DNA from: Mizuhopecten yessoensis
Taxonomy: Eukaryota
Assembly: GCF_002113885.1 (NCBI RefSeq)
Contig: NW_018404833.1
Location: 463,235 to 527,234, forward strand
DNA length: 64,000 nt
Reading direction: 5' to 3'
Part shown: piece by piece, positions 8,261 through 62,800 of the stretch
Layout of the letters: the number at the start of each line of letters is the position of its first letter
How positions within the stretch are numbered: the first letter of the stretch is position 1
Program-made: the position numbers and the translations under genes
The notes under the pieces: model-generated
Told to the model about the DNA's origin: nothing
The model's input: only the letters and a program-made list of their open reading frames with translations
Database searches by the model: none

Positions 8261-8882
8261 GTATTTAATTGATATTCCCCGAATAAATAACCACAAATGT
8301 GCGCATGAATATGCTTCGGTTAACTTCACGATAAAACAAATATCAAACTTAAACCCAATAGCTTATACCCAAAACATTTAATCATATAACAGGTTTCATA
8401 GATATCTTATACAACCTAGTTTGATATTCACGTAGTTTTAGTTTGTAGTCTTTTTATGTCGTTTTGGTTGTTGTTTTCAAATGATTGAACGCTTGTCTCC
8501 TTGATGTGGTATGTGAGGACGTGTTCTGAATACGTTTCACCATGCATCCAGTTTTGTCAGCTCTCGTTAGCTTAATTTCAGAAAATTGTCTGCAGAAATA
8601 TGAACTTTTTTTGTATTGATTATATGAAGGAGATACTTTTGAGTCCGGGGACACGTATGTTTGTTTGTGTGTTTGTTTTTAGATTTAAAAAAAAGTTATT
8701 ATGAAATATCATTGATTCAACCTTGTGTTTTATTTAGGGAGATGAAGCTTTATACATCAGTGCTCCCCCGGCCTTGTTTACCCATCATATTATAACATAT
8801 ATACATGTATTACTATAATTAGCAATTGTCGGTAGCAGCTATCGAGCCTTTAATATCCAACCTAGGGAGGGATGGTGGTTAG

Positions 8883-8992
8883 TGACGTCACGGCTACATG
8901 TACAGTGGCTGAATATATGAGAGATGCCTGTCTCACTCCCGGCAAATTGTCACAAGACGTAGGACGCTTTCCTCTCACTGCAGCAAGTAAGT
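8883..8992 (+). promoter_or_regulatory. Candidate promoter (CRE plus TATA-like) and short non-coding exon ending in a strong donor
   Basis: TGACGTCA at 8883-8890, AATATATGA near 8912, CAA|GTAAGT at 8987. Confidence 0.35.
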
Positions 8993-16500: not shown

Positions 16501-18363
16501 AATATTCACATGTTGTGATGCAATCAGTTACATGTTTGAAAAAAGAAATAAGAAAACAGAAAAATCTGCCTGAGTCGAACTCTGGACTCTTATATTGCAA
16601 AGCTTTAACACTTAACGAATGTTGCCATCTAGGGATGATACAAATGCAGGGCATCGGTATGAGTGTCAATATGTGGGTGGCAAAGACTTCAAAAACAAAG
16701 AATTTGTCAGGAGCGTTACTCTAAGCCAGAAAAAAACTCCTTTAGTTTGTTTAATCATTCATATAAAGGGAGAATACTATACTCCAGGTCAGAGAATCTA
16801 TGAGTGGGACTCTTCTTAACAATTATAATTGATGCAGAGATACATGCACCCTTAACCTTATTCTGCTAATAAGATAGAAATAAAATGTAAATTAGAGGAC
16901 AGTTCAGTAGGGGTCGCCCACGTGCTGTCTGCGTGATCGGCCGGAAGTTCTAGTCATATTGATGGACTTGTCTGTTCTATTGTGTCTATATTAAGTATTA
17001 CACGTCAATGGAGACTGGTTATTTTACAATAAGTTTGGTGATGCTGACGTATTTGTGCGCGGAAACATCACAGTCTGCCTCCAGGTTGGGTATCACATAC
17101 TAATTGCGAGCGTTTGGGGACAAGTTGATGCGGAATCATATATAGAGACGCTGTTTCTATTTCATTTGTATACATAACCATGTACCGCCAGTAATTAAGT
17201 CTGAACTGCCGAAATTGTCGTATTTGTTGAACAACGTAACGCTGAAAGCGATTAACCAATGTATCTCGGTGGGCGTACCGGTTTGATGATTCAAATAACA
17301 AATGCCATCATTACTGGAGAGCACGCCATTATCATGTATAATTGTCGAGCGGGCATGTGTTACGGCTTGTTCTATAAGGTGATCAAACATAGGTCGTTAT
17401 ATTGATGGTAAATCAGAGAAACAGAACATCGCTATAATGGCCGTTCGGAATGCGTTTACATTGTCTAAAACTGACCTATAAATGTAGATTTCACTTTGGT
17501 TCGGACTTTTGGTGTCGACAAGGGAGCGACACTATAGCATGCGCTCTATAGCAGCAGCTTTGTGTAGAGCTAAATGTAATAATTAACAATGGCGGAGTTC
17601 AGAGGACATTCGCTGGAACAAAACCACATGACTCCTGTCAGCGTCTTGTCCCCCGAGATTCAACTAATGCCAATATCGTCCACTTTTAAAGAATTAATAA
17701 AAATAGAGATAATTCAACCTCAATCTCGTGGGAGTTATGTCTATGTTACCAAAATATCGTTTGTTGCCTCGAGTCTCGCGAGAACAATGCAGAAGCGCTA
17801 GTCTCTGCTAGGTCTCTTTTGTGACGTCACGAAGTGACTTCTGGTTTGGCTTTGCAATTAGACACGACCGTTAAAACATGAATGTAGTTTTGCAAATAGC
17901 TCTCGGCGCTCGATTATAATATGAATTTGTTATCAGTAATAGATATGCCCTTTTATATCTTTCCTATACTGCGGTCAAAGAGTACTTACATTATAAAACA
18001 GCCACCTATTCAACATTAACACGAATATTTTAAAATATTTCAATTCCTACTCATGTTGGACTCAATGTAATTACCAAATGTAACCTGTTTCATTTGCCCA
18101 TGAAATTGACCAGCCTAAAATGTACTGCGCGTTTGAATAACGCAGCAGAAAATGTCGTATTTAATCTTATGAACGTAACAAAAATTAAATATGACATTTA
18201 AAATTTGTATTTTGGTATTGTTTCTATGTTATTTGGATGTATTGAACTGCCAGTGTACATCATCCTGTTGTATGGTGGTCCTTCAATTACGGATTGTATT
18301 TTTTTAAATCAACTTTCTCAGGGTCCCAATACCCATTTATGACATACTCGCTCTGTTACAGAA

Positions 18364-19798
18364 ATGACGACGATGGTGCCTCACGTGATGCTTGTTCTTT
18401 TCCTGGTTTGCGGGGCGGGTCTCGCCCAAGGCAATCCTGTGCTTGCCAATCCTTACATCATTCAATTTCTTCCTCTGCAGGATCGCTGTCTATTCATCTG
18501 CAACATTTGTTTCGACAAACAAGTAAGTTGTAACGCCTTTGAAAAGACCTTCGTCTAGTTTCCATTTAGTATATAATATTACAAAACCTTAATTATTCAT
18601 CTTTAAAATGCAGTGAATTGTTCGACTTGTCTTCTATGTCATATTTGCCGGAAATGATTTTATAAAACCTCGCTCATATCACCACGTGATCTTCTATATG
18701 CTAATGTTGGTAATCTTAATTTCTGTAAAGGTTCCTCGTTTTATAAATTTGAAACCCTTGTAGAATCTACTTGTTTCGTTGCTCGACCTTGAACATTTTC
18801 TATTGCTAGTACATGCCTTTCTAAATTTGGGCACCAAACTTGATTTGCATACTCAATTAAAAGTATGGATGTTCGGTAAACGTTCCTCCAGGGTGTAGTT
18901 GAATCTATCAATGTTTGTATTTCCCACGTGCATCATTTTACGGATTGAAGTGTAGCTACCAGGTGTCTGGCCATTTTGTTAAAAATGAAAAGACGTCTAC
19001 CGTAGAACGTCGCAATCTTGTTTTAAATTTGTTGATCTAAAAGCTTTTGAATCATCAGCGAAAAGGTAAGTATCCGTTAACAGTTGGCATATCATTAATG
19101 TTTAATTAAAAGAGGTAGTTCTAACACTGATCCCTGTGGAATACCGCTTATTAGGGAATGGTCCAGCAATACCATATTTTGCGAGTTTATATATCAATCA
19201 AATGCAGATTCAGATTCTTATTGTCCTTGTGTTTTACAACACATCAGAGAAAAGACATAAACTATACTGTATTTACAAAACAATACAATGACATACACAA
19301 TAGTATACATGTACATTATGAAAAGTAGTCGATAAACAGTCTTGGTCTTGGAAAACATAGCGAAGCAAAATAGGGCAATGCTTTAAAAATTCTCCATCGG
19401 TTTCGTACCCTTTTCATCATCAGATTGTGCAATCGTATTGAGACTTGTGGCGATAAAAAAAAAGTTGACGCAAGGGCATGCAAATGGAAGGAACGACAAC
19501 TATGATTGCAGTTGGTTTTAAGACATCTACATTACAATATTAATATTGAATGTCACATGATTTGCATTGTTATCTGAAGATCATGTAAAATACTTGTACT
19601 AATAATATTCTCACTAGTGTAGCCCACGTGAAATTTGTATCATTTCAGATTCCATTGATGGGGGTTTGTGCCAACACCGTTTGTCCGAAAATCAGTAAAA
19701 GCTTCTTTGAAGTCAATCAGTGGATCTCAAAACGGTGTCAAAACTACGAAAGTCTGCAAGCCGCCTTCTTTCCTCAAGACACACAGGTTCAGCTTTAG
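18364..19798 (+). CDS. Secreted 6-Cys neuropeptide precursor, eclosion-hormone-like (102 aa; exons 18364-18522 and 19649-19798)
   Basis: An acceptor ttacag sits 2 nt before the ATG. Signal peptide MTTMVPHVMLVLFLVCGAGLAQG. Donor caa|gtaagt at 18523 and acceptor catttcag| at 19648, phase 0. Mature peptide NPVLANPYIIQFLPLQDRCLFICNICFDKQIPLMGVCANTVCPKISKSFFEVNQWISKRCQNYESLQAAFFPQDTQVQL. AATAAA near 20334 and 20514. Confidence 0.82.
18640..19155 (-). mobile_element. Degenerate CR1-type LINE reverse transcriptase fragment inside the neuropeptide gene intron
   Basis: Minus strand gives SGIPQGSVL, INDMP, YLFADDSK and LRLPTLAYRRSRGDM, with frameshifts and stops. Confidence 0.8.
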
Positions 19799-20676
19799 AC
19801 CAACGAGAACGAGGCTTTGCCAGAATGAGGCTGTGTATTTCCCGATTGATCTCACCTTCTCATTACATAAAAAACCCGTTTTCCTTAAAGGAAATCTTAG
19901 TGCATTACTATACGAAAAGTCTTAAAACAATGTACCCCAATAGTCCGGAAACCGCGCTTCCGAGGAACTCAATAACATTTCAGTGGCTTTTCCCTTCTCA
20001 TTAATCCGGAGAGGGAAACCAAAGTGATCGATGAACAAAGTTCTTCAGTATATTTAGAACTTTAATTTTAGTTAAATGTGTAGAAAAATGGATACCCGTT
20101 GTAATGGTAAATGGCGTTTTGTGGAAAACACAAGACATACAGTTTTTCACAATCTTATTTGTTGGAGGATTGGTGATAAATAAGAAATTGTCAGACAAAT
20201 CAGACAAAGATTATTATTCGATTACATTTATACATCAATGAACTGATTTGTTCTAAAGGTATGAATTGTTGCCGAACAAATTATTCGGCTATGTAAACGA
20301 TATAAAGAGTAGAAGCGCGAGCTCAAATATGACAATAAAATCCAACTCGAACAATACTTAACTTATTAAGAGCTTCACAAATGGAGGCGTTGTTTCATTT
20401 GGCAATTTGTATGTTTATATGAAATAGAAAATGTACGGGTTTAAGTTGATCAATTTTCGTGTACGAAATATATGCTACGTCACGTGTATTTCCTTTCAAA
20501 AAGGCTTCATACTAATAAACATTATGTTTTGAATGGGAATGTGAACTTTGGTGATTAATTAAAGATTTATTTGCAAGGTCAATAGAACACGTAAAAATGG
20601 TTTGTTGAAGGTTTAAAACATTTTAAACAAATAAGGGGACAATTAAATTGTGACCATGATATATGTGTCAGGCGGC

Positions 20677-23600
20677 ATACATCCTTAACCCCAAAACAGA
20701 TCACACGTACCCTGTGTAAGGTAACATACATCCTTAACCCCAATACAGATCACACGTATACCGTGTAAGGTAACATACATCCTTAATCCCAATACAGATC
20801 ACACGTATACCGTGTAAGGTGGCGTACATCCTTAACCCTAATATAGATCACACGTATACCGTGTAAAGTAACATACATCCTTAACCCCAATACAGATCAC
20901 ACGTATACCGTGTAAGGTAACTTACATCCTTAAACCAAATACAGGTAACACGTATACCGTGAAAGGAAACATACATCCTTAATCCCAATACAGATCACTC
21001 GAATACCGTGTAAGGTAGCGTACATCCTTAACCCTAATACAGATCACACGTATACCGTGTAAGGTAACATACATCCTTAAACCAAATACAGGTCACACGT
21101 ATACCGTGTAAGGTAACATACATCCTTAACCCCCAATACAGATCACACGTACCATGTGTAAGGTAACATACATCCTTAACCCCAATACAGATCACACGTA
21201 TACCGTGTAAGGTAACATACATCTTTAACCCCAATACAGGTCACACGTAAACCGTGTAAGGTAACATACAGTTGTGGGATCGCACAACGTTACACGATGT
21301 GCGGTGTGCGCACGATGTGTGCACGGTGTGTGAACGATGTGTGCACGATGTGCGAACGATAAAAATCTGGGCGATCAAATCTTGCGCACATTTGTGTGCA
21401 CGACGGACGAACGTTGTGCGATAACAATCGTGGTTGGTGCAAATTGAGGAATGCCTTAACAATATATACGGTTTCGTGTTTAAACATATAAACCTGATTT
21501 TTACGTATGTTTCTATATTCTACCTACACCTATAAACTTATCTTTATATCTATACTTTCTTAAATTTAGAAATTGTGTTTTTGGTATTTTTTAAAAGACC
21601 TTAATCGACACCTGTGAAATCACAACACAGTCCCGTATACAGGTAAACATAGCCACTAGCCGTCTACATGTACCTGGACGGTAGTTTTCCCCCGCCCGGG
21701 GCGCTTACGTACTTCGTCGGGTAGGGCCAGGGGTGTGAAAACACAGGTGAAGGGGAGCTATAGGCAAACCGAATGCAAATAACAAATACTAAACGTCCAG
21801 CTGTGTTTTCATTACGGTTATACGGTATCGCATATCAGCTCTATGTGTCAGGGACAGGCCCGGTCAAACCCCGGTAACTCATCAAATTGTTAATTACATA
21901 TTCTGTTACCTGGGCGCGAAACCCATTCTTGACAGGCTAACGGTCACTGTAATACTGTGTTACACGCATTGTACAACTACATAATCTTCATTACTTTGAT
22001 GAGATATTACAATAATACATACAGTTTCCATTATTGCATACGAGCTTTCCGTATTTTTTTCATTCCGTAATATTGATCTACAAGTTGTACCCAATCGCCC
22101 CGGTGTGCGGAGAGAAGCACACAACGGGGGGAACGATTGTTAAATCGCACAGTTGTGCGCACCATGTGTGGACGATGTGCGGACGGTGTGTGAACGATGT
22201 ATGCACGGTGTGCGCACGCTATTTTTGGTGCGTTGTGCGGTCACACAACTGTACATCCTTAACCCCAACACAGATCACACGTATACCTTGTAAGGTAACA
22301 TACATCCTTAACCCCAATACAGGTCACACATATACCGTGTAAGGTAACATACATCCTTAACCCCAATGCAGGTCACACGTATACCGTGTAAGGTAACGTA
22401 CATCCTTAACCCCAATACAGATCACACGAATACCGTGTAAGGTAACATACATCCTTAACAACACAGATCACACGTATACCTTGTAAGGAAACATACATCC
22501 TTAACCCCAATACAGATCACACGTACTCTGTATAAGGTAACATACATCCATACATCTTTAACCCCAATACAGGTCACACGTATACCGTGTAAGGTAACGT
22601 ACATCCTTAACCCCAATACAGATCACACGTACTCTGTATAAGGTAACATAAATCCTTAACCCCAATACAGATCACACGTACTCTGTATAAGGTAACATAA
22701 ATCCTTAACCCCAATACAGATCACACGTACTCTGTATAAGGTAACATAAATCCTTAACCCCAATACAGATCACACGTACCCAGTGTTTGGTAACATACAT
22801 CCTTAACCCCAATGCAGGTCACACGTATACCGTGTAAGGTAACGTACATCCTTAACCCCAATACAGATCACACGTACTCTGTATAAGGTAACATACATCC
22901 ATACATCTTTAACCCCAATACAGGTCACACGTATACCGTGTAAGGGAACATACATCCTTAACCCCAATACAGATCACTCGTATACCGTGTAAGGTAACAT
23001 ACATCCTAAACCCCAATACAGATCACACGTATACCGTGTAAGGTAACATACATCCTAAACCCCAATACAGATCACACGTACCCTGTATAAGGTAACATAC
23101 ATCCTTAACCCCAATACAGATCACACGTATACCGTGTAAGGTAACATACATCCTTAAACCAAATACAGGTCACACGTATACCGTGTAAGGTAAAATACAT
23201 CCTTAACCCCAATACAGATCACACGAATACCGTGTAAGGTAACATACATCCTTAACCCCCATACAGATCACACTTACCCCGTGTAAGGTAACATACATCC
23301 TTAACCCCAATACAGATCACACTTGCCCCGTTTAAGGTAACATACATCCTTAATCCCAATACAGATCACACGTATACCGTGTAAGGTAACATACATCCTT
23401 AACCCCAATACAGGTCACACGTATACCTTGTAAGGTAAAATACATCCTTAACCCCAATACAGATCACACGTACTCTGTATAAGGTAACATACATCCTTAA
23501 CCCCAATACAGGTAACACGTATACAGTGTAAGGTAACATACATCCTTAACCCCAACACAGATCACACTTACCCCGTGTAAGGTCACATACATCCTTAACC

Positions 23601-26386: not shown

Positions 26387-26759
26387 CGGTACTCATGACT
26401 TCTCCCTTCTGTGAACATTGAAGCCATGACTGACCACCACTCTTTGGCACTGTTTATAATCGACGATACATGTCTCAGAAGGACAATAGAAGGCTGCAGC
26501 ATATCTCTATTCTAATTCTCTAAAATGAAATAAATACCAAAAACAACCTGTGGATTTCACATGCGCCGATTTAAGCGGGTTACAGGCGTCAGATGAATCA
26601 AAATCTTTTAGTTACACAATCAAGACCACCATTGGCAGAATTTTATTTTATTACAACAAAGATGATTCTTCCACAATCAAGTGTCACTATGTCTGTATCA
26701 AGAATAACGATCCTTACCCATTTCAGGTCGGCACACATTAGACATACTTTCTCGACTTC

Positions 26760-27745
26760 ATAGTCCGGATTGACGAAGTTCTACTGTAAACAGTACAGAT
26801 AAACGAGGTTCTATTGTATACAGTACCAATTAACGGAGTTATGTTGTACATAGTCCCGATTAACGAAGTTTTACTGCACACAGTACGAATTAACGAAGTT
26901 CTACTGTAAACAGTACAGATTAACGAAGTTCTACTACACCTAGTCCAGATTAACGAAGTTCTACTGTAAACAGTACAGATTAACGAAGTTCTACTGTAAA
27001 CAGTACAGATTAACGAAGTTCTACTACACCTAGTCCAGATTAACGAAGTTCTACTGTAAACAGTACAGATTAACGAAGTTCTACTGTAAACAGTACAGAT
27101 TAACGAAGTTCTACTACACCTAGTCCAGATTAACGAAGTTCTACTGTACCTAGTCCAGATTAACGAAGTTCTACTGTAAACAGTACAGATTAACGAAGTT
27201 CTACTGTACCTAGTCCAGATTAACGAAGTTCTACTGTAAACAGTACAGATTAACGAAGTTCTACTGTACCTAGTCCAGATTAACGAAGTTCTACTGTAAA
27301 CAGTACAGATTAACGAAGTTCTACTGTACCTAGTCCAGATTAACGAAGTTCTACTGTAAACAGTACAGATTAACGAAGTTCTACTGTACCTAGTCCAGAT
27401 TAACGAAGTTCTACTGTAAACAGTACAGATTAACGAAGTTCTACTGTACCTAGTCCAGATTAACGAAGTTCTACTGTAAACAGTACAGATTAACGAAGTT
27501 CTACTGTACCTAGTCCAGATTAACGAAGTTCTACTGTAAACAGTACAGATTAACGAAGTTCTACTGTACCTAGTCCAGATTAACGAAGTTCTACTGTAAA
27601 CAGTACAGATTAACGAAGTTCTACTGTAAACAGTACAGATTAACGAAGTTCTACTGTACCTAGTCCAGATTAACGAAGTTCTACTATACACAGTACGAAT
27701 TAAATGAAGCTCTTTAGTGTACACAATCTGGATTAACGAGGTTGT
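26760..27745. repeat. 30-bp satellite with alternating A/B variants (60-bp higher-order unit)
   Basis: CAGTACAGATTAACGAAGTTCTACTGTAAA alternating with TAGTCCAGATTAACGAAGTTCTACTGTACC. Confidence 0.95.
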
Positions 27746-30383: not shown

Positions 30384-31067
30384 ATGAATCTGGAGTTCAA
30401 TTCATTTGGGAGGTCACCTCATTCTGATATGGACATTCTACATAAACGTATTGGAAGAAAACGAAACGAGCGGGAAAGACGCCGGGTTCAGGGAATCAAT
30501 GATCTTTTAGTTAATCTAAAAGACAAGCTTCCGATAGATTGGACGTCTCCAAAAATGAGTAAGCTCGAAATTCTTCGAAAATCGACGTCATACATAAAAC
30601 TTCTGATGGAAATGACCCTGGATGAAGAATCGGAAATACCATTTGACGGAAATCTTGACGTTTTCGGTGAGCAACAAGAGTTTCAAGGACAAAGTGTATG
30701 TGGATTCAAAGACGAGACGTTTTCCGGAAGTTCACACTCTTCGTTGTGCTCCGTAGGAACTCTAGCCTCGTCTTCAGGAGAATTGTCATTAGTATCAAAT
30801 GACGAATCGGTTGTATCCGATAGCTTAGAAAGTGCATGTGCGTTTTCTGGAAATTGTTTTCCAGTATCATCTGAATCAATGTCAACAATATCACAAGGTG
30901 TGTTTTTTGAAAGAACGCAGATGTCACCTTTGTTTACCTGTAATTATCAACCAACAGCAACGCAGCAACAGTGCGCGGCAGTGTTGGAAACAAGTATAGC
31001 TGATCTTGTGGTTTTACACGACTCTGAGATGTCAACAACTGGGGTGATCGATGTCAACAATCTCTGA
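30384..31067 (+). CDS. Intronless bHLH transcription factor, achaete-scute b (ASCL3/4/5-like), divergent
   Basis: 227-aa ORF with RKRNERERRRVQGINDLLVNLKDKLP-IDWTSP-KMSKLEILRKSTSYIKLL; Ser/acidic C-terminus; TATA upstream and AATAAA downstream. Confidence 0.85.
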   Translation: MNLEFNSFGRSPHSDMDILHKRIGRKRNERERRRVQGINDLLVNLKDKLPIDWTSPKMSKLEILRKSTSYIKLLMEMTLDEESEIPFDGNLDVFGEQQEFQGQSVCGFKDETFSGSSHSSLCSVGTLASSSGELSLVSNDESVVSDSLESACAFSGNCFPVSSESMSTISQGVFFERTQMSPLFTCNYQPTATQQQCAAVLETSIADLVVLHDSEMSTTGVIDVNNL

Positions 31068-56800: not shown

Positions 56801-59800
56801 TGTGAAAACATGAATTCTTTGATGATAATAATGGCACATGTGTTGATAGAAAATTCTGATACTTACAAATACAGCTTGGATTTAGCCAGAAGTATAATTA
56901 TATATATATAAATAAATGAAATAATTGACAGTACCATAGAGATAAGTAAAGGAAATATTTCATACCTGTATTTCTTAGATAAATTTGAGGAAACAAATTT
57001 GTTCCAAGTAAAAACTGAATGAAAAGAATATGTAAGATACACACTGAAAATGCTATAAATGTAAAATGAAAACTACATTTTGTAATTCTAAACAATTAAA
57101 TTAAATTAAACAAAAGAATGCTTTTTAATGCAGAAATGATGATAAAATGCTCTGATTATAATGAAAAACTTACCTTTTATCTTCAAGCTTGGCTAAATCT
57201 TCTTGATTATTCTGTTCCAACTCAAATCTGAAGCACATTTAAAATATTTTAAAATTGTTTTCGGAAAAAATAACGATACATTACGAAAGTGAACTCAAAA
57301 GTGATTTTTTTAGCTTTAATAAAAACATTCTCCGTCATCAAATATATTCACATTTAAATAACCAGGGTAAAACATCTTTAATGTACATATTTTTGGGTAA
57401 ATCTTAATCACTGTACAGTTTTAAAAGATAATTATGAATGAAATACAATGTATTAAATCTATAGGGAATCTTTTGTATAACAACAACATTTTACATTGAG
57501 TTTAAATGAGAAAGAACAACAAAAGTAAACAAATCAGTGATACCACATTAACTCCATCCATGTAATATGTTGAACACCTACCCTGCGGCCAGGAGGGAGA
57601 GGTTCTCAGAAGACTTATACAGGTCTGTCATGGAGTGACCCAGAAGGGATGTTCGGGAGAAACTCAATCCACACTAGAATTAAATAGAAAACAAAGTTAA
57701 AACAGTCAAAATTAATGTTTATTATGACCATAGCTTAAATAATTTGAATAAAAAAACACCTGAGTGGTGGCTTTAACATTGATATACAATGTTATACCCC
57801 CCTTTCCCCACTTTGACCTTTTAACCTTGACAGATGATCACCAAAATCTAAGCTAAGTTAGGGTTGTCCCCTGTAAGAAAGCAGTCACACCCAGTGTCCA
57901 TGCTGTCAGTTGCCAATGTAGCCACTGAATGTATGTAATTTAATTTGCCTTCAGTAATTCCAATCAGACTGCAAAACTGAAAACTCACTTCCTGTCCATC
58001 ATTACACATATCCTATCCATGATAATGGCATTGCTGCAACGCCAGAAAAAACATAGGAGTGGCACCGATGATGTAAGGAGTACTAAGTGTACTTACACTT
58101 TGACTTGGGACTGATGATGTAAGGAGTACTAAGTGTACTTACACTTTGACTTGGGACTGATGATGTAAGGAGTACTAAGTGTACTTACACTTTGACTTGG
58201 GACTGATGATGTAAGGAGTACTAAGTGTACTTACACTTTGACTTGGGACTGATGATGTAAGGAGTACTAAGTGTACTTACACTTTGACTTGGGACTGATG
58301 ATGTAAGGAGTACTAAGTGTACTTACACTTTGACTTGGGACTGATGATGTAAGGAGTACTAAGTGTACTTACACTTTGACTTGGGACTGATGATGTAAGG
58401 AGTACTAAGTGTACTTACACTTTGACTTGGGACTGATGATGTAAGGAGTACTAAGTGTACTTACACTTTGACTTGGGACTGATGATGTAAGGAGTACTAA
58501 GTGTACTTACACTTTGACTTGGGACTGATGATGTAAGGAGTACTAAGTGTACTTACACTTTGACTTGGGACTGATGATGTAAGGAGTACTAAGTGTACTT
58601 ACACTTTGACTTGGGACTGATGATGTAAGGAGTACTAAGTGTACTTACACTTTGACTTGGGACTGATGATGTAAGGAGTACTAAGTGTACTTACACTTTG
58701 ACTTGGGACTGATGATGTAAGGAGTACTAAGTGTACTTACACTTTGACTTGGGACTGATGATGTAAGGAGTACTAAGTGTACTTACACTTTGACTTGGGA
58801 CTGATGATGTAAGGAGTACTAAGTGTACTTACACTTTGACTTGGGACTGATGATGTAAGGAGTACTAAGTGTACTTACACTTTGACTTGGGACTGATGAT
58901 GTAAGGAGTACTAAGTGTACTTACACTTTGACTTGGGACTGATGATGTAAGGAGTACTAAGTGTACTTACACTTTGACTTGGGACTGATGATGTAAGGAG
59001 TACTAAGTGTACTTACACTTTGACTTGGGACTGATGATGTAAGGAGTACTAAGTGTACTTACACTTTGACTTGGGACTGATGATGTAAGGAGTACTAAGT
59101 GTACTTACACTTTGACTTGGGACTGATGATGTAAGGAGTACTAAGTGTACTTACACTTTGACTTGGGACTGATGATGTAAGGAGTACTAAGTGTACTTAC
59201 ACTTTGACTTGGGACTGATGATGTAAGGAGTACTAAGTGTACTTACACTTTGACTTGGGACTGATGATGTAAGGAGTACTAAGTGTACTTACACTTTGAC
59301 TTGGGACTGATGATGTAAGGAGTACTAAGTGTACTTACACTTTGACTTGGGACTGATGATGTAAGGAGTACTAAGTGTACTTACACTTTGACTTGGGACT
59401 GATGATGTAAGGAGTACTAAGTGTACTTACACTTTGACTTGGGACTGATGATGTAAGGAGTACTAAGTGTACTTACACTTTGACTTGGGACTGATGATGT
59501 AAGGAGTACTAAGTGTACTTACACTTTGACTTGGGACTGATGATGTAAGGAGTACTAAGTGTACTTACACTTTGACTTGGGACTGATGATGTAAGGAGTA
59601 CTAAGTGTACTTACACTTTGACTTGGGACTGATGATGTAAGGAGTACTAAGTGTACTTACACTTTGACTTGGGACTGATGATGTAAGGAGTACTAAGTGT
59701 ACTTACACTTTGACTTGGGACTGATGATGTAAGGAGTACTAAGTGTACTTACACTTTGACTTGGGACTGATGATGTAAGGAGTACTAAGTGTACTTACAC

Positions 59801-62800
59801 TTTGACTTGGGACTGATGATGTAAGGAGTACTAAGTGTACTTACACTTTGACTTGGGACTGATGATGTAAGGAGTACTAAGTGTACTTACACTTTGACTT
59901 GGGACTGATGATGTAAGGAGTACTAAGTGTACTTACACTTTGACTTGGGACTGATGATGTAAGGAGTACTAAGTGTACTTACACTTTGACTTGGGACTGA
60001 TGATGTAAGGAGTACTAAGTGTACTTACACTTTGACTTGGGACTGATGATGTAAGGAGTACTAAGTGTACTTACACTTTGACTTGGGACTGATGATGTAA
60101 GGAGTACTAAGTGTACTTACACTTTGACTTGGGACTGATGATGTAAGGAGTACTAAGTGTACTTACACTTTGACTTGGGACTGATGATGTAAGGAGTACT
60201 AAGTGTACTTACACTTTGACTTGGGACTGATGATGTAAGGAGTACTAAGTGTACTTACACTTTGACTTGGGACTGATGATGTAAGGAGTACTAAGTGTAC
60301 TTACACTTTGACTTGGGACTGATGATGTAAGGAGTACTAAGTGTACTTACACTTTGACTTGGGACTGATGATGTAAGGAGTACTAAGTGTACTTACACTT
60401 TGACTTGGGACTGATGATGTAAGGAGTACTAAGTGTACTTACACTTTGACTTGGGACTGATGATGTAAGGAGTACTAAGTGTACTTACACTTTGACTTGG
60501 GACTGATGATGTAAGGAGTACTAAGTGTACTTACACTTTGACTTGGGACTGATGATGTAAGGAGTACTAAGTGTACTTACACTTTGACTTGGCACTGATG
60601 ATGTAAGGAGTACTAAGTGTACTTACACTTTGACTTGGGACTGATGATGTAAGGAGTACTAAGTGTACTTTCCCTTTGACTTGGGACTGATGATGTAAGG
60701 AGTACTAAGTGTACTTACACTTTGACTTGGCACTGATGATGTAAGGTAGTACTAAGTGTACTTACACTTTGGAGTTCTTGTTTCATCTTAGCAGCCTCAG
60801 CAGGATGATTAAACCTGAACATGTTAGTCCTGCCAAGCAAAATCACAGCCCCTACAAAACATCAACATCACAGCCCCTTAAACAAAACATCAAAATCACG
60901 TCCCCTACAAAACATCAACATCACAGCCCCTTAAACAAAACATCAACATCACAGCAACTTTTAACAAAACATCAAAATCACAGCCCCTACAAAACATCAA
61001 CATCACAGCCCCTTAAACAAAACATCAAAATCACAGCCCCTACAAAACATCAGCATCACAGCCCCTTAAACAAAACATTAAAATCACAGCCCCTTTAACA
61101 AAACATCAAAATCACAGCCCCTACAAAACATCAACATCACAGCCCCTTAAACAAAACATCAACATCACAGCCCCTTAAACAAAACATCAACATCACAGCC
61201 CCTTAAACAAAACATCAAAATCACAGCCCCTTATTAAATTACAATGAAACTTGATAAAGAAGTCTTTAAAAACAAATTATCTAAAAAAGATAGGCGGCAC
61301 AGTAGTCTAGTGGTAGGATGCTGGATTTGTGACCGAAGGGTTGTCGGTTTGAGTCACAGCACAGCACAGCACTGTGTTGTATCTTTAAGCAAGATACTTT
61401 ACTACACTTGTTCCAGTCTACTCAGCTGTAAATGAGTTTGTGGTTGGGCAGTGCTATAATTGTTGAATGCTAGCTGTGAGCGCTAAAAATGGCAGCACCG
61501 GCTGTATGCTCCCAAGAGAGTTGAGAAAGATATTGGCTGATTGCAAAGGCCCTATAACCATGGATAATAATTTGTGAACCGCTTTGAGATGACCTAGTAA
61601 CTAGGTTGTGATGAAGCGGTATATAAGAACCTCAAATTATTATCATAAATTTCTACAACACATTCAAGCATCTTCATTACATTGCCATTAAAAGTGGTAG
61701 TTAACATACTTGAATGTATATATAAAGCAATGGACTTTAGTGATTATGATCATGATGTGGTAGGTGTAAATTATGATATTGTCACAGAACCTTACCTTGA
61801 GTAAGCTTGACTGGATCGGCGACCACTGAGCCGTTGATGGAGCACATGGCCCCCTGCAGTGGGTATAGAGTTACCTCCCCATCTTTATGGACAATCTCAC
61901 AGTGGTTCTCTTCGACATCTATCCCAGCTATCTCTGTGTTAAACATTAAATGTGTCATTTATCGAATGGTGTTAGACCAGGTATTAAAACTATTCAATAA
62001 GTTCTGATTTACTGCGACAAAGACTGCTACATAGTATGCTAACCATCCTTGCCATTGCAATAGATACATTTTTGCTAGAGATGCACTATCCTTTTAGAAT
62101 TCAGGTTAAAGCTGTAAATTTAAAATTGATCATTGATTAAAATCAAACCTGCTAAGCATCACTCCTACAAAATTAACTATGAACAGAATCTGTTTATGTC
62201 TTGACCAGTCTTAAATTCCAAAATTTAAAAGCTGATCACTTGATCTAAAGTGCGTATTGCAGAGTTATCTTCTCTTGTGAGCAGGTATCGATTGTAATAC
62301 GTCATTGGTTTGAGTGAGAAAATTACATCGTTTTCTCAAAAATTGATGACGTTACTCTCACAAACAAATGACGTAACAATCAATACCTGCTCACAAGAGC
62401 ATATAACTCTGCAATACGAAAAGACGGAATAGTCTTACAATGTCAGCCCATGTTTTAGTTCTAAACGTCTTTAGCAGAGGCCACATTGTAACCATCTTGG
62501 GTGTTGGATCAGGGAGATAATAGATTGCACATTTATGCATCAATACATCATATGGAGTTTCATTCGAATTTGGCAAGTAACTTTGGATACAAGTATCTGA
62601 TAAATTTATGGTGGAATAATGAATAAATTTAGAACAGAAACCATTTTCCTCAAGTTTGTTCACAGACTTTGTTTAACTAAAGAAATCCACAGAAACAACC
62701 GCAAGGGGACAACATATCAACTTCAAATTTAATTCATTTAATTTTTATAGTTCTAAAATAACTACATGTAGATGGGACTGATTCAAATACCCTCTGTGAA

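What the first reader, a model, noticed from the sequence alone, without database searches (positions are those of the whole stretch)
18364..19798. Hidden spliced eclosion-hormone-like neuropeptide gene in an apparently non-moulting animal
Seen in the sequence: two exons joined by a canonical phase-0 GT-AG intron give a 102-aa precursor with a signal peptide and exactly six mature cysteines, spaced C-x3-C-x2-C-x10-C-x4-C-x17-C. Known (recalled): insect eclosion hormone has C-x3-C-x2-C-x12-C-x3-C-x10-C, and the Manduca peptide starts NPAIA and ends CEDFASIAPFL. This peptide starts NPVLA after the predicted cleavage and has CQNYESLQAAFF. Inference: a divergent EH-family ligand, presumably for a receptor guanylyl cyclase, in a probable bivalve. 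EH-like peptides outside arthropods have been reported, but their function is largely unknown. The altered spacing and a KR directly before Cys6 (possible two-chain processing) may mark a distinct subfamily.
Basis: partly seen in the sequence, partly recalled or inferred. Interest (0 to 1): 0.85.

Follow-up and report, generated by a model that had tools for sequence, protein, structure and literature searches.

The report
Orphan secreted six-cysteine scallop peptide
The predicted two-exon gene is real and transcribed in the Yesso scallop and encodes a small secreted six-cysteine peptide found nowhere else so far, but no test could place it in the eclosion-hormone family, whose two known mollusc forms lie elsewhere in this genome.

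Summary
Observation confirmed. Exon 1 (18364-18522) and exon 2 (19649-19798) are joined by a GT..AG phase-0 intron. The exact 18522|19649 junction stands in assembled contigs of two runs from two studies.

The product has a signal peptide and six cysteines spaced C3C2C10C4C17C. The gene is not wholly hidden. RefSeq lists it as uncharacterized LOC110446828 of Mizuhopecten yessoensis (141 aa). Its distal-exon N-terminal extension buries the signal peptide.

The EH interpretation is not established:
- Pfam Eclosion does not match the precursor or the mature part, while the scallop's own two-domain EH scores 7e-12.
- There is no significant similarity to either published mollusc EH type, both present elsewhere in this genome.
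- Three of five cysteine spacings fall outside the range seen in a published EH set.
- In favour: the three nearest language-model clusters are arthropod EH, though below the tool's threshold. C1-C4 align in register at E about 0.1.

No homologue was found in 5.8 or 1.84 billion proteins. EH in non-moulting animals is already published.

Verdict: a lineage-restricted secreted helical peptide, EH-like in layout, membership unproven (about 0.35).

The parts
8872..8986 (+). Distal first coding exon of the RefSeq model XP_021347819.1. It encodes 38 codons plus 1 base (residues 1-39 of the 141-aa model), has a GTAAGT donor at 8987, and is spliced to the acceptor AG at 18360-18361.
   Evidence: tblastn of P0001 on the window; sequence; donor and acceptor strings.
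18259..18363 (+). Proximal 5' leader of the unspliced-leader transcript. It holds an in-frame TGA at 18340, a short uORF (ATG 18272) and an out-of-frame uATG at 18339.
   Evidence: X1 contig runs colinear with the genome over 18259-18522; uATG and stop scan.
18364..18432 (+). Signal peptide (23 codons, MTTMVPHVMLVLFLVCGAGLAQG). An alternative cleavage after Ala21 is possible.
   Evidence: Translation; hydrophobic core at residues 7-15 in the Kyte-Doolittle scan; -3/-1 rule applied by eye.
18364..18522 (+). Coding exon 1: 53 codons holding the signal peptide, the N-terminal 30 residues of the mature peptide and Cys1-3 (C-x3-C-x2-C).
18523..19648 (+). Phase-0 GT..AG intron of 1126 nt lying between Cys3 and Cys4. 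It contains repeat-like stretches.
   Evidence: Joint 18522->19649 in X1 and X4 contigs; splice-site strings.
19649..19798 (+). Coding exon 2: 49 codons plus TAG. It holds Cys4-6, a KR just before Cys6, and the C-terminal CQNYESLQAAFF motif.
19799..20386 (+). 3' UTR. The X1 contig reaches 20205 and the X3 contig reaches 20386. AATAAA lies at 20334-20339.

Best explanation
LOC110446828 of the Yesso scallop is a real, single-copy, transcribed gene. Its proximal transcript encodes a 102-aa precursor.

Inferred mechanism:
- An N-terminal signal peptide directs the precursor into the secretory pathway.
- The released peptide is about 79-81 residues, near-neutral and rather hydrophobic.
- It folds into three or four short helices locked by three disulfides. 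Cys1-3 sit on one helix at i, i+4, i+7, and Cys4-5 sit on the next helix.
- It most likely acts outside the cell as a hormone- or pheromone-type ligand.

Its layout is like that of eclosion hormone. By every test available here it is not a member of the EH family as currently defined. It is not the orthologue of either EH-type peptide already described in molluscs. As far as protein databases show, it is restricted to this scallop lineage.

Shown: gene structure, splicing, single copy, lack of detectable relatives, failure of the family tests.
Inferred: secretion, fold, ligand role.
For: - Splice junction in contigs of two runs from two studies; exon-only share in 14 presumptive RNA runs.
- The RefSeq model uses the same two exons and frame.
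- Single copy in the 988-Mb assembly.
- Only itself is found in 5.8 billion proteins and in 1.84 billion representatives.
- No Pfam family at E<=10 for the 141-aa, 102-aa or 79-aa forms, against 7e-12 for the scallop's two-domain EH.
- No significant pairwise or profile similarity to scallop EH types A and B.
- Spacings x10, x4 and x17 lie outside the 12-13, 3 and 10-14 seen in the EH ligand set read.
- AF2 single-sequence model: helices at 15-26, 36-45, 49-59 and 63-70.
- pI 7.8, net charge +0.7, GRAVY +0.13, which is not the profile of a cationic antimicrobial peptide.
Against: - The three nearest clusters among 7.7 million in the ESM Atlas feature search are all arthropod EH, for the precursor and for the mature part alone. 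BLASTP and hhalign align Cys1-4 in register with mollusc EH-type peptides at E about 0.1. True but very remote EH homology therefore remains possible.
- Small peptides are often left unannotated, so absence from protein databases does not prove lineage restriction.
- The AF2 model is of low confidence (pLDDT 57.7) and gave no informative fold match.
- No tissue, peptide or receptor data exist. The peptide's motifs are absent from the held supplements of the scallop ganglia peptidome paper.
Confidence: 0.5

Rival explanations
1. It is a genuine but highly divergent member of the EH family. It would be a third mollusc EH type, made from a signal-peptide precursor, folded with the EH disulfide pattern (C1-C5, C2-C4, C3-C6), and acting on the scallop orthologue of the EH receptor guanylyl cyclase to raise cGMP. 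Two-chain processing at the KR before Cys6 is possible.
For: - C-x3-C-x2-C lies on a predicted helix.
- The ESM Atlas top three clusters are all PF04736 (0.86-0.84 for the precursor, 0.76-0.75 for the mature part), and a CHH-type cluster stands at rank 12.
- Cys1-4 align in register with scallop type A and with a three-sequence EH profile (E 0.11 and 0.085).
- By eye against Manduca EH as printed: N1, P2, A5 and Y8 match at the N-terminus, CAES-C resembles CANTVC, and after Cys6 C-E-D-x-x-S-I matches C-Q-N-x-x-S-L.
- The published mollusc type A EH-like peptide also gets no Pfam Eclosion hit, so the Pfam failure is not decisive.
- An EH receptor orthologue is listed for this scallop (PY_T05201).
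Against: - No Pfam hit.
- All atlas scores are under the tool's 0.9 threshold. Only 150 shared features (the tool expects 170 or more for true members) and only 4 of 10 top named hits agree, which the tool rates as 'probably wrong'.
- C4-x3-C5 is the same in every sequence read in the EH set but is x4 here. The C3-C4 and C5-C6 loops are also out of range.
- Shuffle tests with Cys held fixed give p = 0.09 to 0.65.
- An intron splits the domain between Cys3 and Cys4. In the scallop type A and B genes the whole mature peptide sits in one exon.
- The motif matches were found after the hypothesis was made.
Confidence: 0.35
2. It is a lineage-specific secreted cysteine-rich peptide with a non-hormonal role, such as defence, reproduction or gamete interaction, or shell or mucus matrix. 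The CxxxCxxC motif would be convergent.
For: - It is an orphan with no relatives.
- It was assembled in many small RNA data sets from at least 7 studies, at word depth 14 in one run. That is more than expected for a peptide made by a few neurons.
- It is absent from the held supplements of the scallop ganglia neuropeptide and peptidome paper.
Against: - It is near-neutral and hydrophobic, not cationic.
- It is predicted helical rather than knottin- or defensin-like.
- It matches no known antimicrobial or toxin family in Pfam.
- Tissue of origin of the runs is unknown because the metadata are coded.
Confidence: 0.1
3. The functional product, if there is one, is the 141-aa RefSeq form translated from the distal-exon ATG. 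The hydrophobic stretch would then be internal and act as a signal anchor. Alternatively the transcript is a young gene without a stable function.
For: - The RefSeq model has a canonical donor and acceptor and a good Kozak context at 8872.
- The X4 contig ends exactly at 18362, the first base after that acceptor. This is what a branch in the assembly graph between two isoforms would give.
- uATGs in the proximal leader could dampen translation of the 102-aa frame.
- No homologues exist to show purifying selection.
Against: - The X1 contig runs unspliced through the acceptor from 18259. An in-frame TGA at 18340 then makes 18364 the first possible start of this frame.
- A signal peptide followed by six Cys is a coherent secreted-peptide design.
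- The 39-aa extension has no Pfam match.
Confidence: 0.05

Closest known systems
Arthropod eclosion hormone (Pfam PF04736; e.g. Manduca sexta EH, AAA29310.1 as printed in PMC6660194 suppl. 18)
   Same: - Signal peptide followed by one 60-80-aa peptide with six Cys.
- First three Cys spaced C-x3-C-x2-C.
- Similar short motifs at the N-terminus (NP..A..Y) and after Cys6 (C-[EQ]-[DN]-x-x-S-[IL]).
- Nearest language-model neighbours.
   Different: - No Pfam match.
- Loops x10/x4/x17 instead of x12/x3/x10.
- Five more residues before Cys1.
- An intron inside the domain.
Mollusc two-domain EH (oyster Cragi-EH1/2, PMC8398477; scallop gene at G000:C4057, L001 1462-1866 minus strand)
   Same: Secreted, with six Cys per domain and C-x3-C-x2-C at the start. 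Present in the same genome.
   Different: - That gene has two EH domains separated by KR in one intronless ORF.
- Each domain is C3C2C12C3C11C and matches Pfam at 7e-12.
- The candidate shows no significant similarity to either domain, and the best local alignments are out of register.
Mollusc eight-Cys, RFamide-ending EH-like peptide (De Oliveira et al. 2019 EH ligand set; scallop PY_T10640 = G000:C3995, L012 1378-1716)
   Same: Core CL[YF]xCxxC aligns in register through Cys4 (E 0.11). It also lacks a Pfam Eclosion hit.
   Different: - That peptide has an extra Cys pair (CDPR.. and CC).
- It carries a conserved DDGP..CS.KY motif and a C-terminal RFGK amidation site.
- Its mature peptide lies in one exon and it is conserved across all mollusc classes.
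- None of these features is present in the candidate.
CHH/ITP/MIH family (Pfam PF01147)
   Same: Helical six-Cys neurohormones thought to be distantly related to EH (PMC8398477). A cluster partly carrying this family stands at rank 12 of the atlas feature search.
   Different: No Pfam hit. From my own knowledge, the CHH spacing is C-x15/16-C-x2-C-x12-C-x3-C-x8-C, which does not fit.

Membership tests
Eclosion hormone (PF04736) | Match to the Pfam Eclosion profile at or above the 25-bit gathering score | tested here: not met
   There was no hit at E<=10 for P0001, P0001:40-141 or P0001:63-141, nor for either exon alone. The window locus is not among the genome's matches. Positive control: scallop two-domain EH at 45.3 bits, 7e-12. 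Caveat: the published mollusc type A EH-like peptide also fails this test.
Eclosion hormone (PF04736) | Six conserved Cys with family spacing C-x3-C-x2-C-x12/13-C-x3-C-x10..14-C | tested here: not met
   The six Cys and the first two spacings are met. C3-C4 is x10, C4-C5 is x4 and C5-C6 is x17, and all three fall outside the ranges in the roughly 70 arthropod, mollusc, nemertean and phoronid sequences read in PMC6660194 suppl. 18 part 6.
Eclosion hormone (PF04736) | Significant sequence similarity to accepted members | tested here: inconclusive
   Against scallop EH types: BLASTP found none or gave E 0.11, hhalign gave E 0.085 (probability 0.7%), and shuffle tests gave p 0.02-0.33 (0.09-0.65 with Cys held fixed). 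The two accepted types compared with each other scored barely better (p 0.02-0.04), so the test has little power.
Eclosion hormone (PF04736) | Precursor architecture: signal peptide directly followed by one mature peptide of 60-80 aa | tested here: met
   A 23-aa signal-like N-terminus is followed by 79 aa with no propeptide. This holds only for the proximal-start transcript. The RefSeq form adds 39 aa in front.
Eclosion hormone (PF04736) | Disulfide topology C1-C5, C2-C4, C3-C6 in a helical fold | not testable with these tools
   The AF2 single-sequence model is helical but of low confidence (pLDDT 57.7), and no coordinates are returned. Fold searches were uninformative. No EH relative turned up in the PDB by sequence.
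Eclosion hormone (PF04736) | Activates the EH receptor guanylyl cyclase (cGMP rise) | not testable with these tools
   A receptor orthologue is listed for this scallop in PMC6660194 (PY_T05201_EH).
CHH/ITP/MIH (PF01147) | Match to the Pfam Crust_neurohorm profile | tested here: not met
   No hit at E<=10.

The most novel reading that the evidence does not exclude
The peptide is a third, undescribed class of EH-superfamily ligand in molluscs. It would have lengthened loops and an intron inside the domain, and possibly be cut at KR into a disulfide-linked two-chain hormone. Its N- and C-terminal motifs would be closer to arthropod EH than to either known mollusc type. It would signal through the scallop EH-receptor guanylyl cyclase alongside the two known ligand types.
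Probability: 0.3. Interest if true: 0.6.

Novelty: new variant of a known kind. Interest (0 to 1): 0.35.

Why it matters
If it is only an orphan secreted peptide, it is one of many lineage-specific cysteine-rich genes in bivalves. The practical gain is then a corrected gene model: the true start is probably at 18364, giving a signal peptide that the RefSeq 141-aa model hides.

If it proves to be an EH-superfamily ligand, scallops would have at least four EH-like peptides from three genes for one known receptor type. That would give a handle on what EH signalling does in animals that do not moult, and on how far the EH cysteine scaffold can drift. The general point that non-moulting animals have EH is already published, so it adds no surprise.

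Tried and rejected
- Exon-by-exon Pfam scan: only a chance HRM hit (E 0.054) on exon 2.
- The search for homologous proteins with exon 1, with the longer open frame around exon 2, and with P0001:40-141: nothing but the protein itself.
- The look-up of encoding contigs for P0001: not on record.
- Own-genome search for paralogues of each exon: none.
- Weak Pfam Eclosion hits elsewhere in the genome (L004, L008): chance or repeat ORFs.
- AF2 single-sequence models of the candidate (pLDDT 57.7) and of scallop type A (40.3): too poor for fold comparison. ESM Atlas and PDB fold searches returned only generic helical or insignificant hits. Atlas structure neighbours of the stored model were likewise generic.
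- PDB sequence search: nothing relevant for the candidate or for the canonical EH.
- Literature: LOC110446828 appears in no held paper. The peptide's motifs are absent from the held supplements of the scallop neuropeptide paper and of the EH evolution paper.
- Antimicrobial reading rejected as the main explanation because of the near-neutral charge.
- Kazal, saposin, attractin, insulin and CHH cysteine frameworks were considered from memory and rejected because the spacings do not fit and Pfam gives no hit.

Full report
**1. What is in the sequence**

The window is G000:C1506:463235-527234 of a 988-Mb assembly in 82,659 contigs. The organism is Mizuhopecten (Patinopecten) yessoensis, the Yesso scallop, as shown by the name of the only database protein that matches.

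- An ATG at 18364 opens a 53-codon stretch that ends CAA|GTAAGT at 18522.
- After an acceptor ..TTTCAG, 49 codons run from 19649 to a TAG at 19796-19798.
- Exon 1 encodes a typical signal sequence, with a hydrophobic core at residues 7-15. Small residues at -3/-1 allow cleavage after Ala21 or Gly23.
- The remaining 79 residues carry six cysteines spaced 3, 2, 10, 4, 17.

**2. Is it transcribed and spliced as predicted?**

Yes. Fourteen presumptive RNA runs from at least 7 studies hold 0.26-0.32 of the sampled words of 18250-19950. That is the share the exons and UTRs make up. Six DNA-like runs hold 0.79-0.89.

Contigs of four runs were laid on 17600-20900:
- The joint 18522->19649 (GT..AG, skipping 1126) appears in an 821-nt record of X1 (18259-18522 + 19649-20205, no mismatch).
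- It also appears in a 507-nt record of X4, from a different study.
- An X3 contig begins at 19649 and another reaches 20386. An AATAAA lies at 20334.
- One raw-read RNA run (X21) had no reads on the gene, so strand and transcript ends were not measured.

**3. The gene is annotated, with a different N-terminus**

An exhaustive HMMER search of 1.84 billion representatives with exon 2 found one protein, P0001. It is XP_021347819.1, 'uncharacterized protein LOC110446828', 141 aa long.

- Residues 40-141 equal the two exon translations.
- Residues 1-39 map to a distal exon at 8872-8986, with a GTAAGT donor. It is spliced to an AG acceptor two bases before the ATG at 18364.
- In that model the signal sequence is internal, which explains why the protein was never recognised as a secreted peptide.
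- The X1 contig runs unspliced through that acceptor from 18259. In that transcript an in-frame TGA at 18340 makes 18364 the first start of the frame.
- The X4 contig ends exactly at 18362, as expected if the assembly graph branches there. Both forms probably exist. I could not test this further because read laying is capped at one call.

All whole-precursor analyses used the public protein by reference (P0001:40-141 for the precursor, P0001:63-141 for the mature part).

**4. Relatives**

None were found.
- Three word-seeded searches of 5.8 billion proteins returned nothing or only P0001.
- The exhaustive search returned only P0001.
- Neither exon has a paralogue in the genome.
- Small peptides are often unannotated, so this shows absence from protein sets, not from other bivalve genomes.

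**5. Is it an eclosion hormone?**

*What the literature already holds.* EH ligands and the receptor guanylyl cyclase are published for non-moulting lophotrochozoans, including molluscs (PMC6660194). The oyster EH precursor holds two EH ligands separated by a dibasic site (PMC8398477).

*This genome carries both published mollusc types elsewhere.*
- The two-domain orthologue is at G000:C4057, a 134-aa intronless ORF. Each domain is C3C2C12C3C11C, and Pfam Eclosion scores 7e-12 with two stretches.
- The eight-Cys, RFGK-ending EH-like type of De Oliveira's ligand set (PY_T10640) is at G000:C3995.
- The candidate is neither of these.

*Tests of membership.*

| Test | Result |
|---|---|
| Pfam on the 141-, 102- and 79-aa forms | no family at E<=10 |
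| BLASTP against the two-domain EH | nothing |
| Smith-Waterman vs shuffles, against the two EH domains | p = 0.01-0.02 and 0.23-0.33; 0.09-0.13 and 0.65-0.67 with Cys fixed; alignments out of register |
| Control: the two EH domains against each other | p < 0.0005, and 0.004 with Cys fixed |
| BLASTP against type A | Cys1-4 aligned in register, E = 0.11 |
| Three-sequence EH profile by hhalign | same in-register alignment, E = 0.085, probability 0.7% |
| Calibration: type A itself on Pfam | no hit |
| Calibration: type A against type B | p only 0.02-0.04 |

The two calibration rows show that these tests have little power at this evolutionary distance.

*Spacing.* I read about 70 arthropod, mollusc, nemertean and phoronid sequences in the EH ligand file.
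- C4-C5 is always x3 (or CC-x2-C). The candidate has x4.
- C3-C4 is 12-13. The candidate has x10.
- C5-C6 is 10-14. The candidate has x17.

*Gene structure.* In the scallop type A and B genes the mature peptide sits in one exon. The candidate is split between Cys3 and Cys4.

**6. Evidence for an EH relationship**

- The ESM Atlas feature search put three arthropod EH clusters first among 7.7 million. Scores were 0.86, 0.85 and 0.84 for the precursor and 0.76-0.75 for the mature part alone. A partly CHH-type cluster stood at rank 12.
- The tool's own calibration calls scores under 0.9 a lead only. Shared features (150) are below the 170 typical of members. Only 4 of 10 top named hits agree.
- By eye, against Manduca EH as printed, short motifs agree: N1, P2, A5, Y8; CAES-C against CANTVC; and C-E-D-x-x-S-I against C-Q-N-x-x-S-L after Cys6.
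- These matches were noticed after the hypothesis was made, so they carry limited weight.

**7. Structure**

- The AF2 single-sequence model is helical, with helices at 15-26 (holding Cys1-3), 36-45 (holding Cys4-5), 49-59 and 63-70. Confidence is low (pLDDT 57.7).
- Fold searches in the ESM Atlas and the PDB were uninformative.
- A model of type A was worse (pLDDT 40.3).
- No EH relative turned up in the PDB by sequence.

**8. Properties**

The mature peptide has pI 7.8, net charge +0.7 and GRAVY +0.13. It has no N-x-S/T glycosylation sequon, no C-terminal Gly for amidation, and one internal KR directly before Cys6. This does not look like a cationic antimicrobial peptide.

**9. Verdict**

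- It is a real gene for a secreted, probably helical, six-Cys peptide whose layout resembles EH.
- Membership of the EH family was tested and not met on the profile and spacing criteria. The similarity test was inconclusive.
- I put true remote EH homology at about 0.35.
- I put an unrelated or unassignable lineage-specific secreted ligand-like peptide at about 0.5.
- I put a non-hormonal role at about 0.1 and the 141-aa form or no function at about 0.05.
- The 'EH in a non-moulting animal' claim is already in the literature, and the canonical scallop EH genes lie elsewhere, so interest is moderate to low.

**10. Could not be done**

- Searches of other mollusc genomes, because no such collection is available.
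- SignalP.
- Tissue assignment of the runs, because the metadata are coded.
- A second reads call for the distal exon.

Noticed in passing
G000:C4057:321618-321923 (L001 1462-1866, minus strand): This is the scallop's canonical EH gene. A single 134-aa ORF holds a signal peptide and two EH domains separated by KR (Pfam Eclosion 7e-12), matching the oyster two-ligand Cragi-EH. The scallop ganglia neuropeptide paper does not mention eclosion hormone, and this gene's motifs are absent from the held supplements of De Oliveira 2019.
   Followed up: partly
G000:C3995:1120116-1120454 (L012 1378-1716, +); also C79535:1038-1069 (L013): An eight-Cys, RFGK-ending EH-like peptide gene (= PY_T10640 of the published EH ligand set). 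Its mature peptide lies in one exon and it gets no Pfam Eclosion hit. An identical 32-mer on a 2-kb contig suggests a haplotig or duplicate.
   Followed up: partly
window 8872-8986: The distal exon of the RefSeq model contains a perfect CRE palindrome TGACGTCA at 8883-8890. Its 39-codon frame has no Pfam match and may be 5' UTR rather than coding.
   Followed up: no
window 18272 and 18339: Two upstream ATGs lie in the proximal leader: an 11-codon uORF and an out-of-frame uATG that overlaps the main start. They could dampen translation of the peptide.
   Followed up: no
window 30384-31064 (+): A single 227-aa ORF with a bHLH DNA-binding domain (PF00010, 2.5e-13), probably an intronless transcription-factor gene about 10 kb downstream.
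   Followed up: no
window 26741-27724 (-): A 328-aa ORF with only repeat-type Pfam hits (Spt5 CTD nonapeptide, NleG; no single stretch passing), so probably a low-complexity repeat protein or a spurious frame.
   Followed up: no
window 18028-18113, 18768-18862, 18911-19172, 19263-19297: Stretches upstream of the gene and inside the intron are covered by separate contigs at 95-99% identity and high depth (up to 220 in X3), with unrelated flanks. They are probably dispersed repeats transcribed elsewhere.
   Followed up: no
window 58061-60770: Another first-stage note (s1-517119) reports a 2.7-kb satellite of about 59 copies of a 5' splice-site-like unit. I did not examine it.
   Followed up: no
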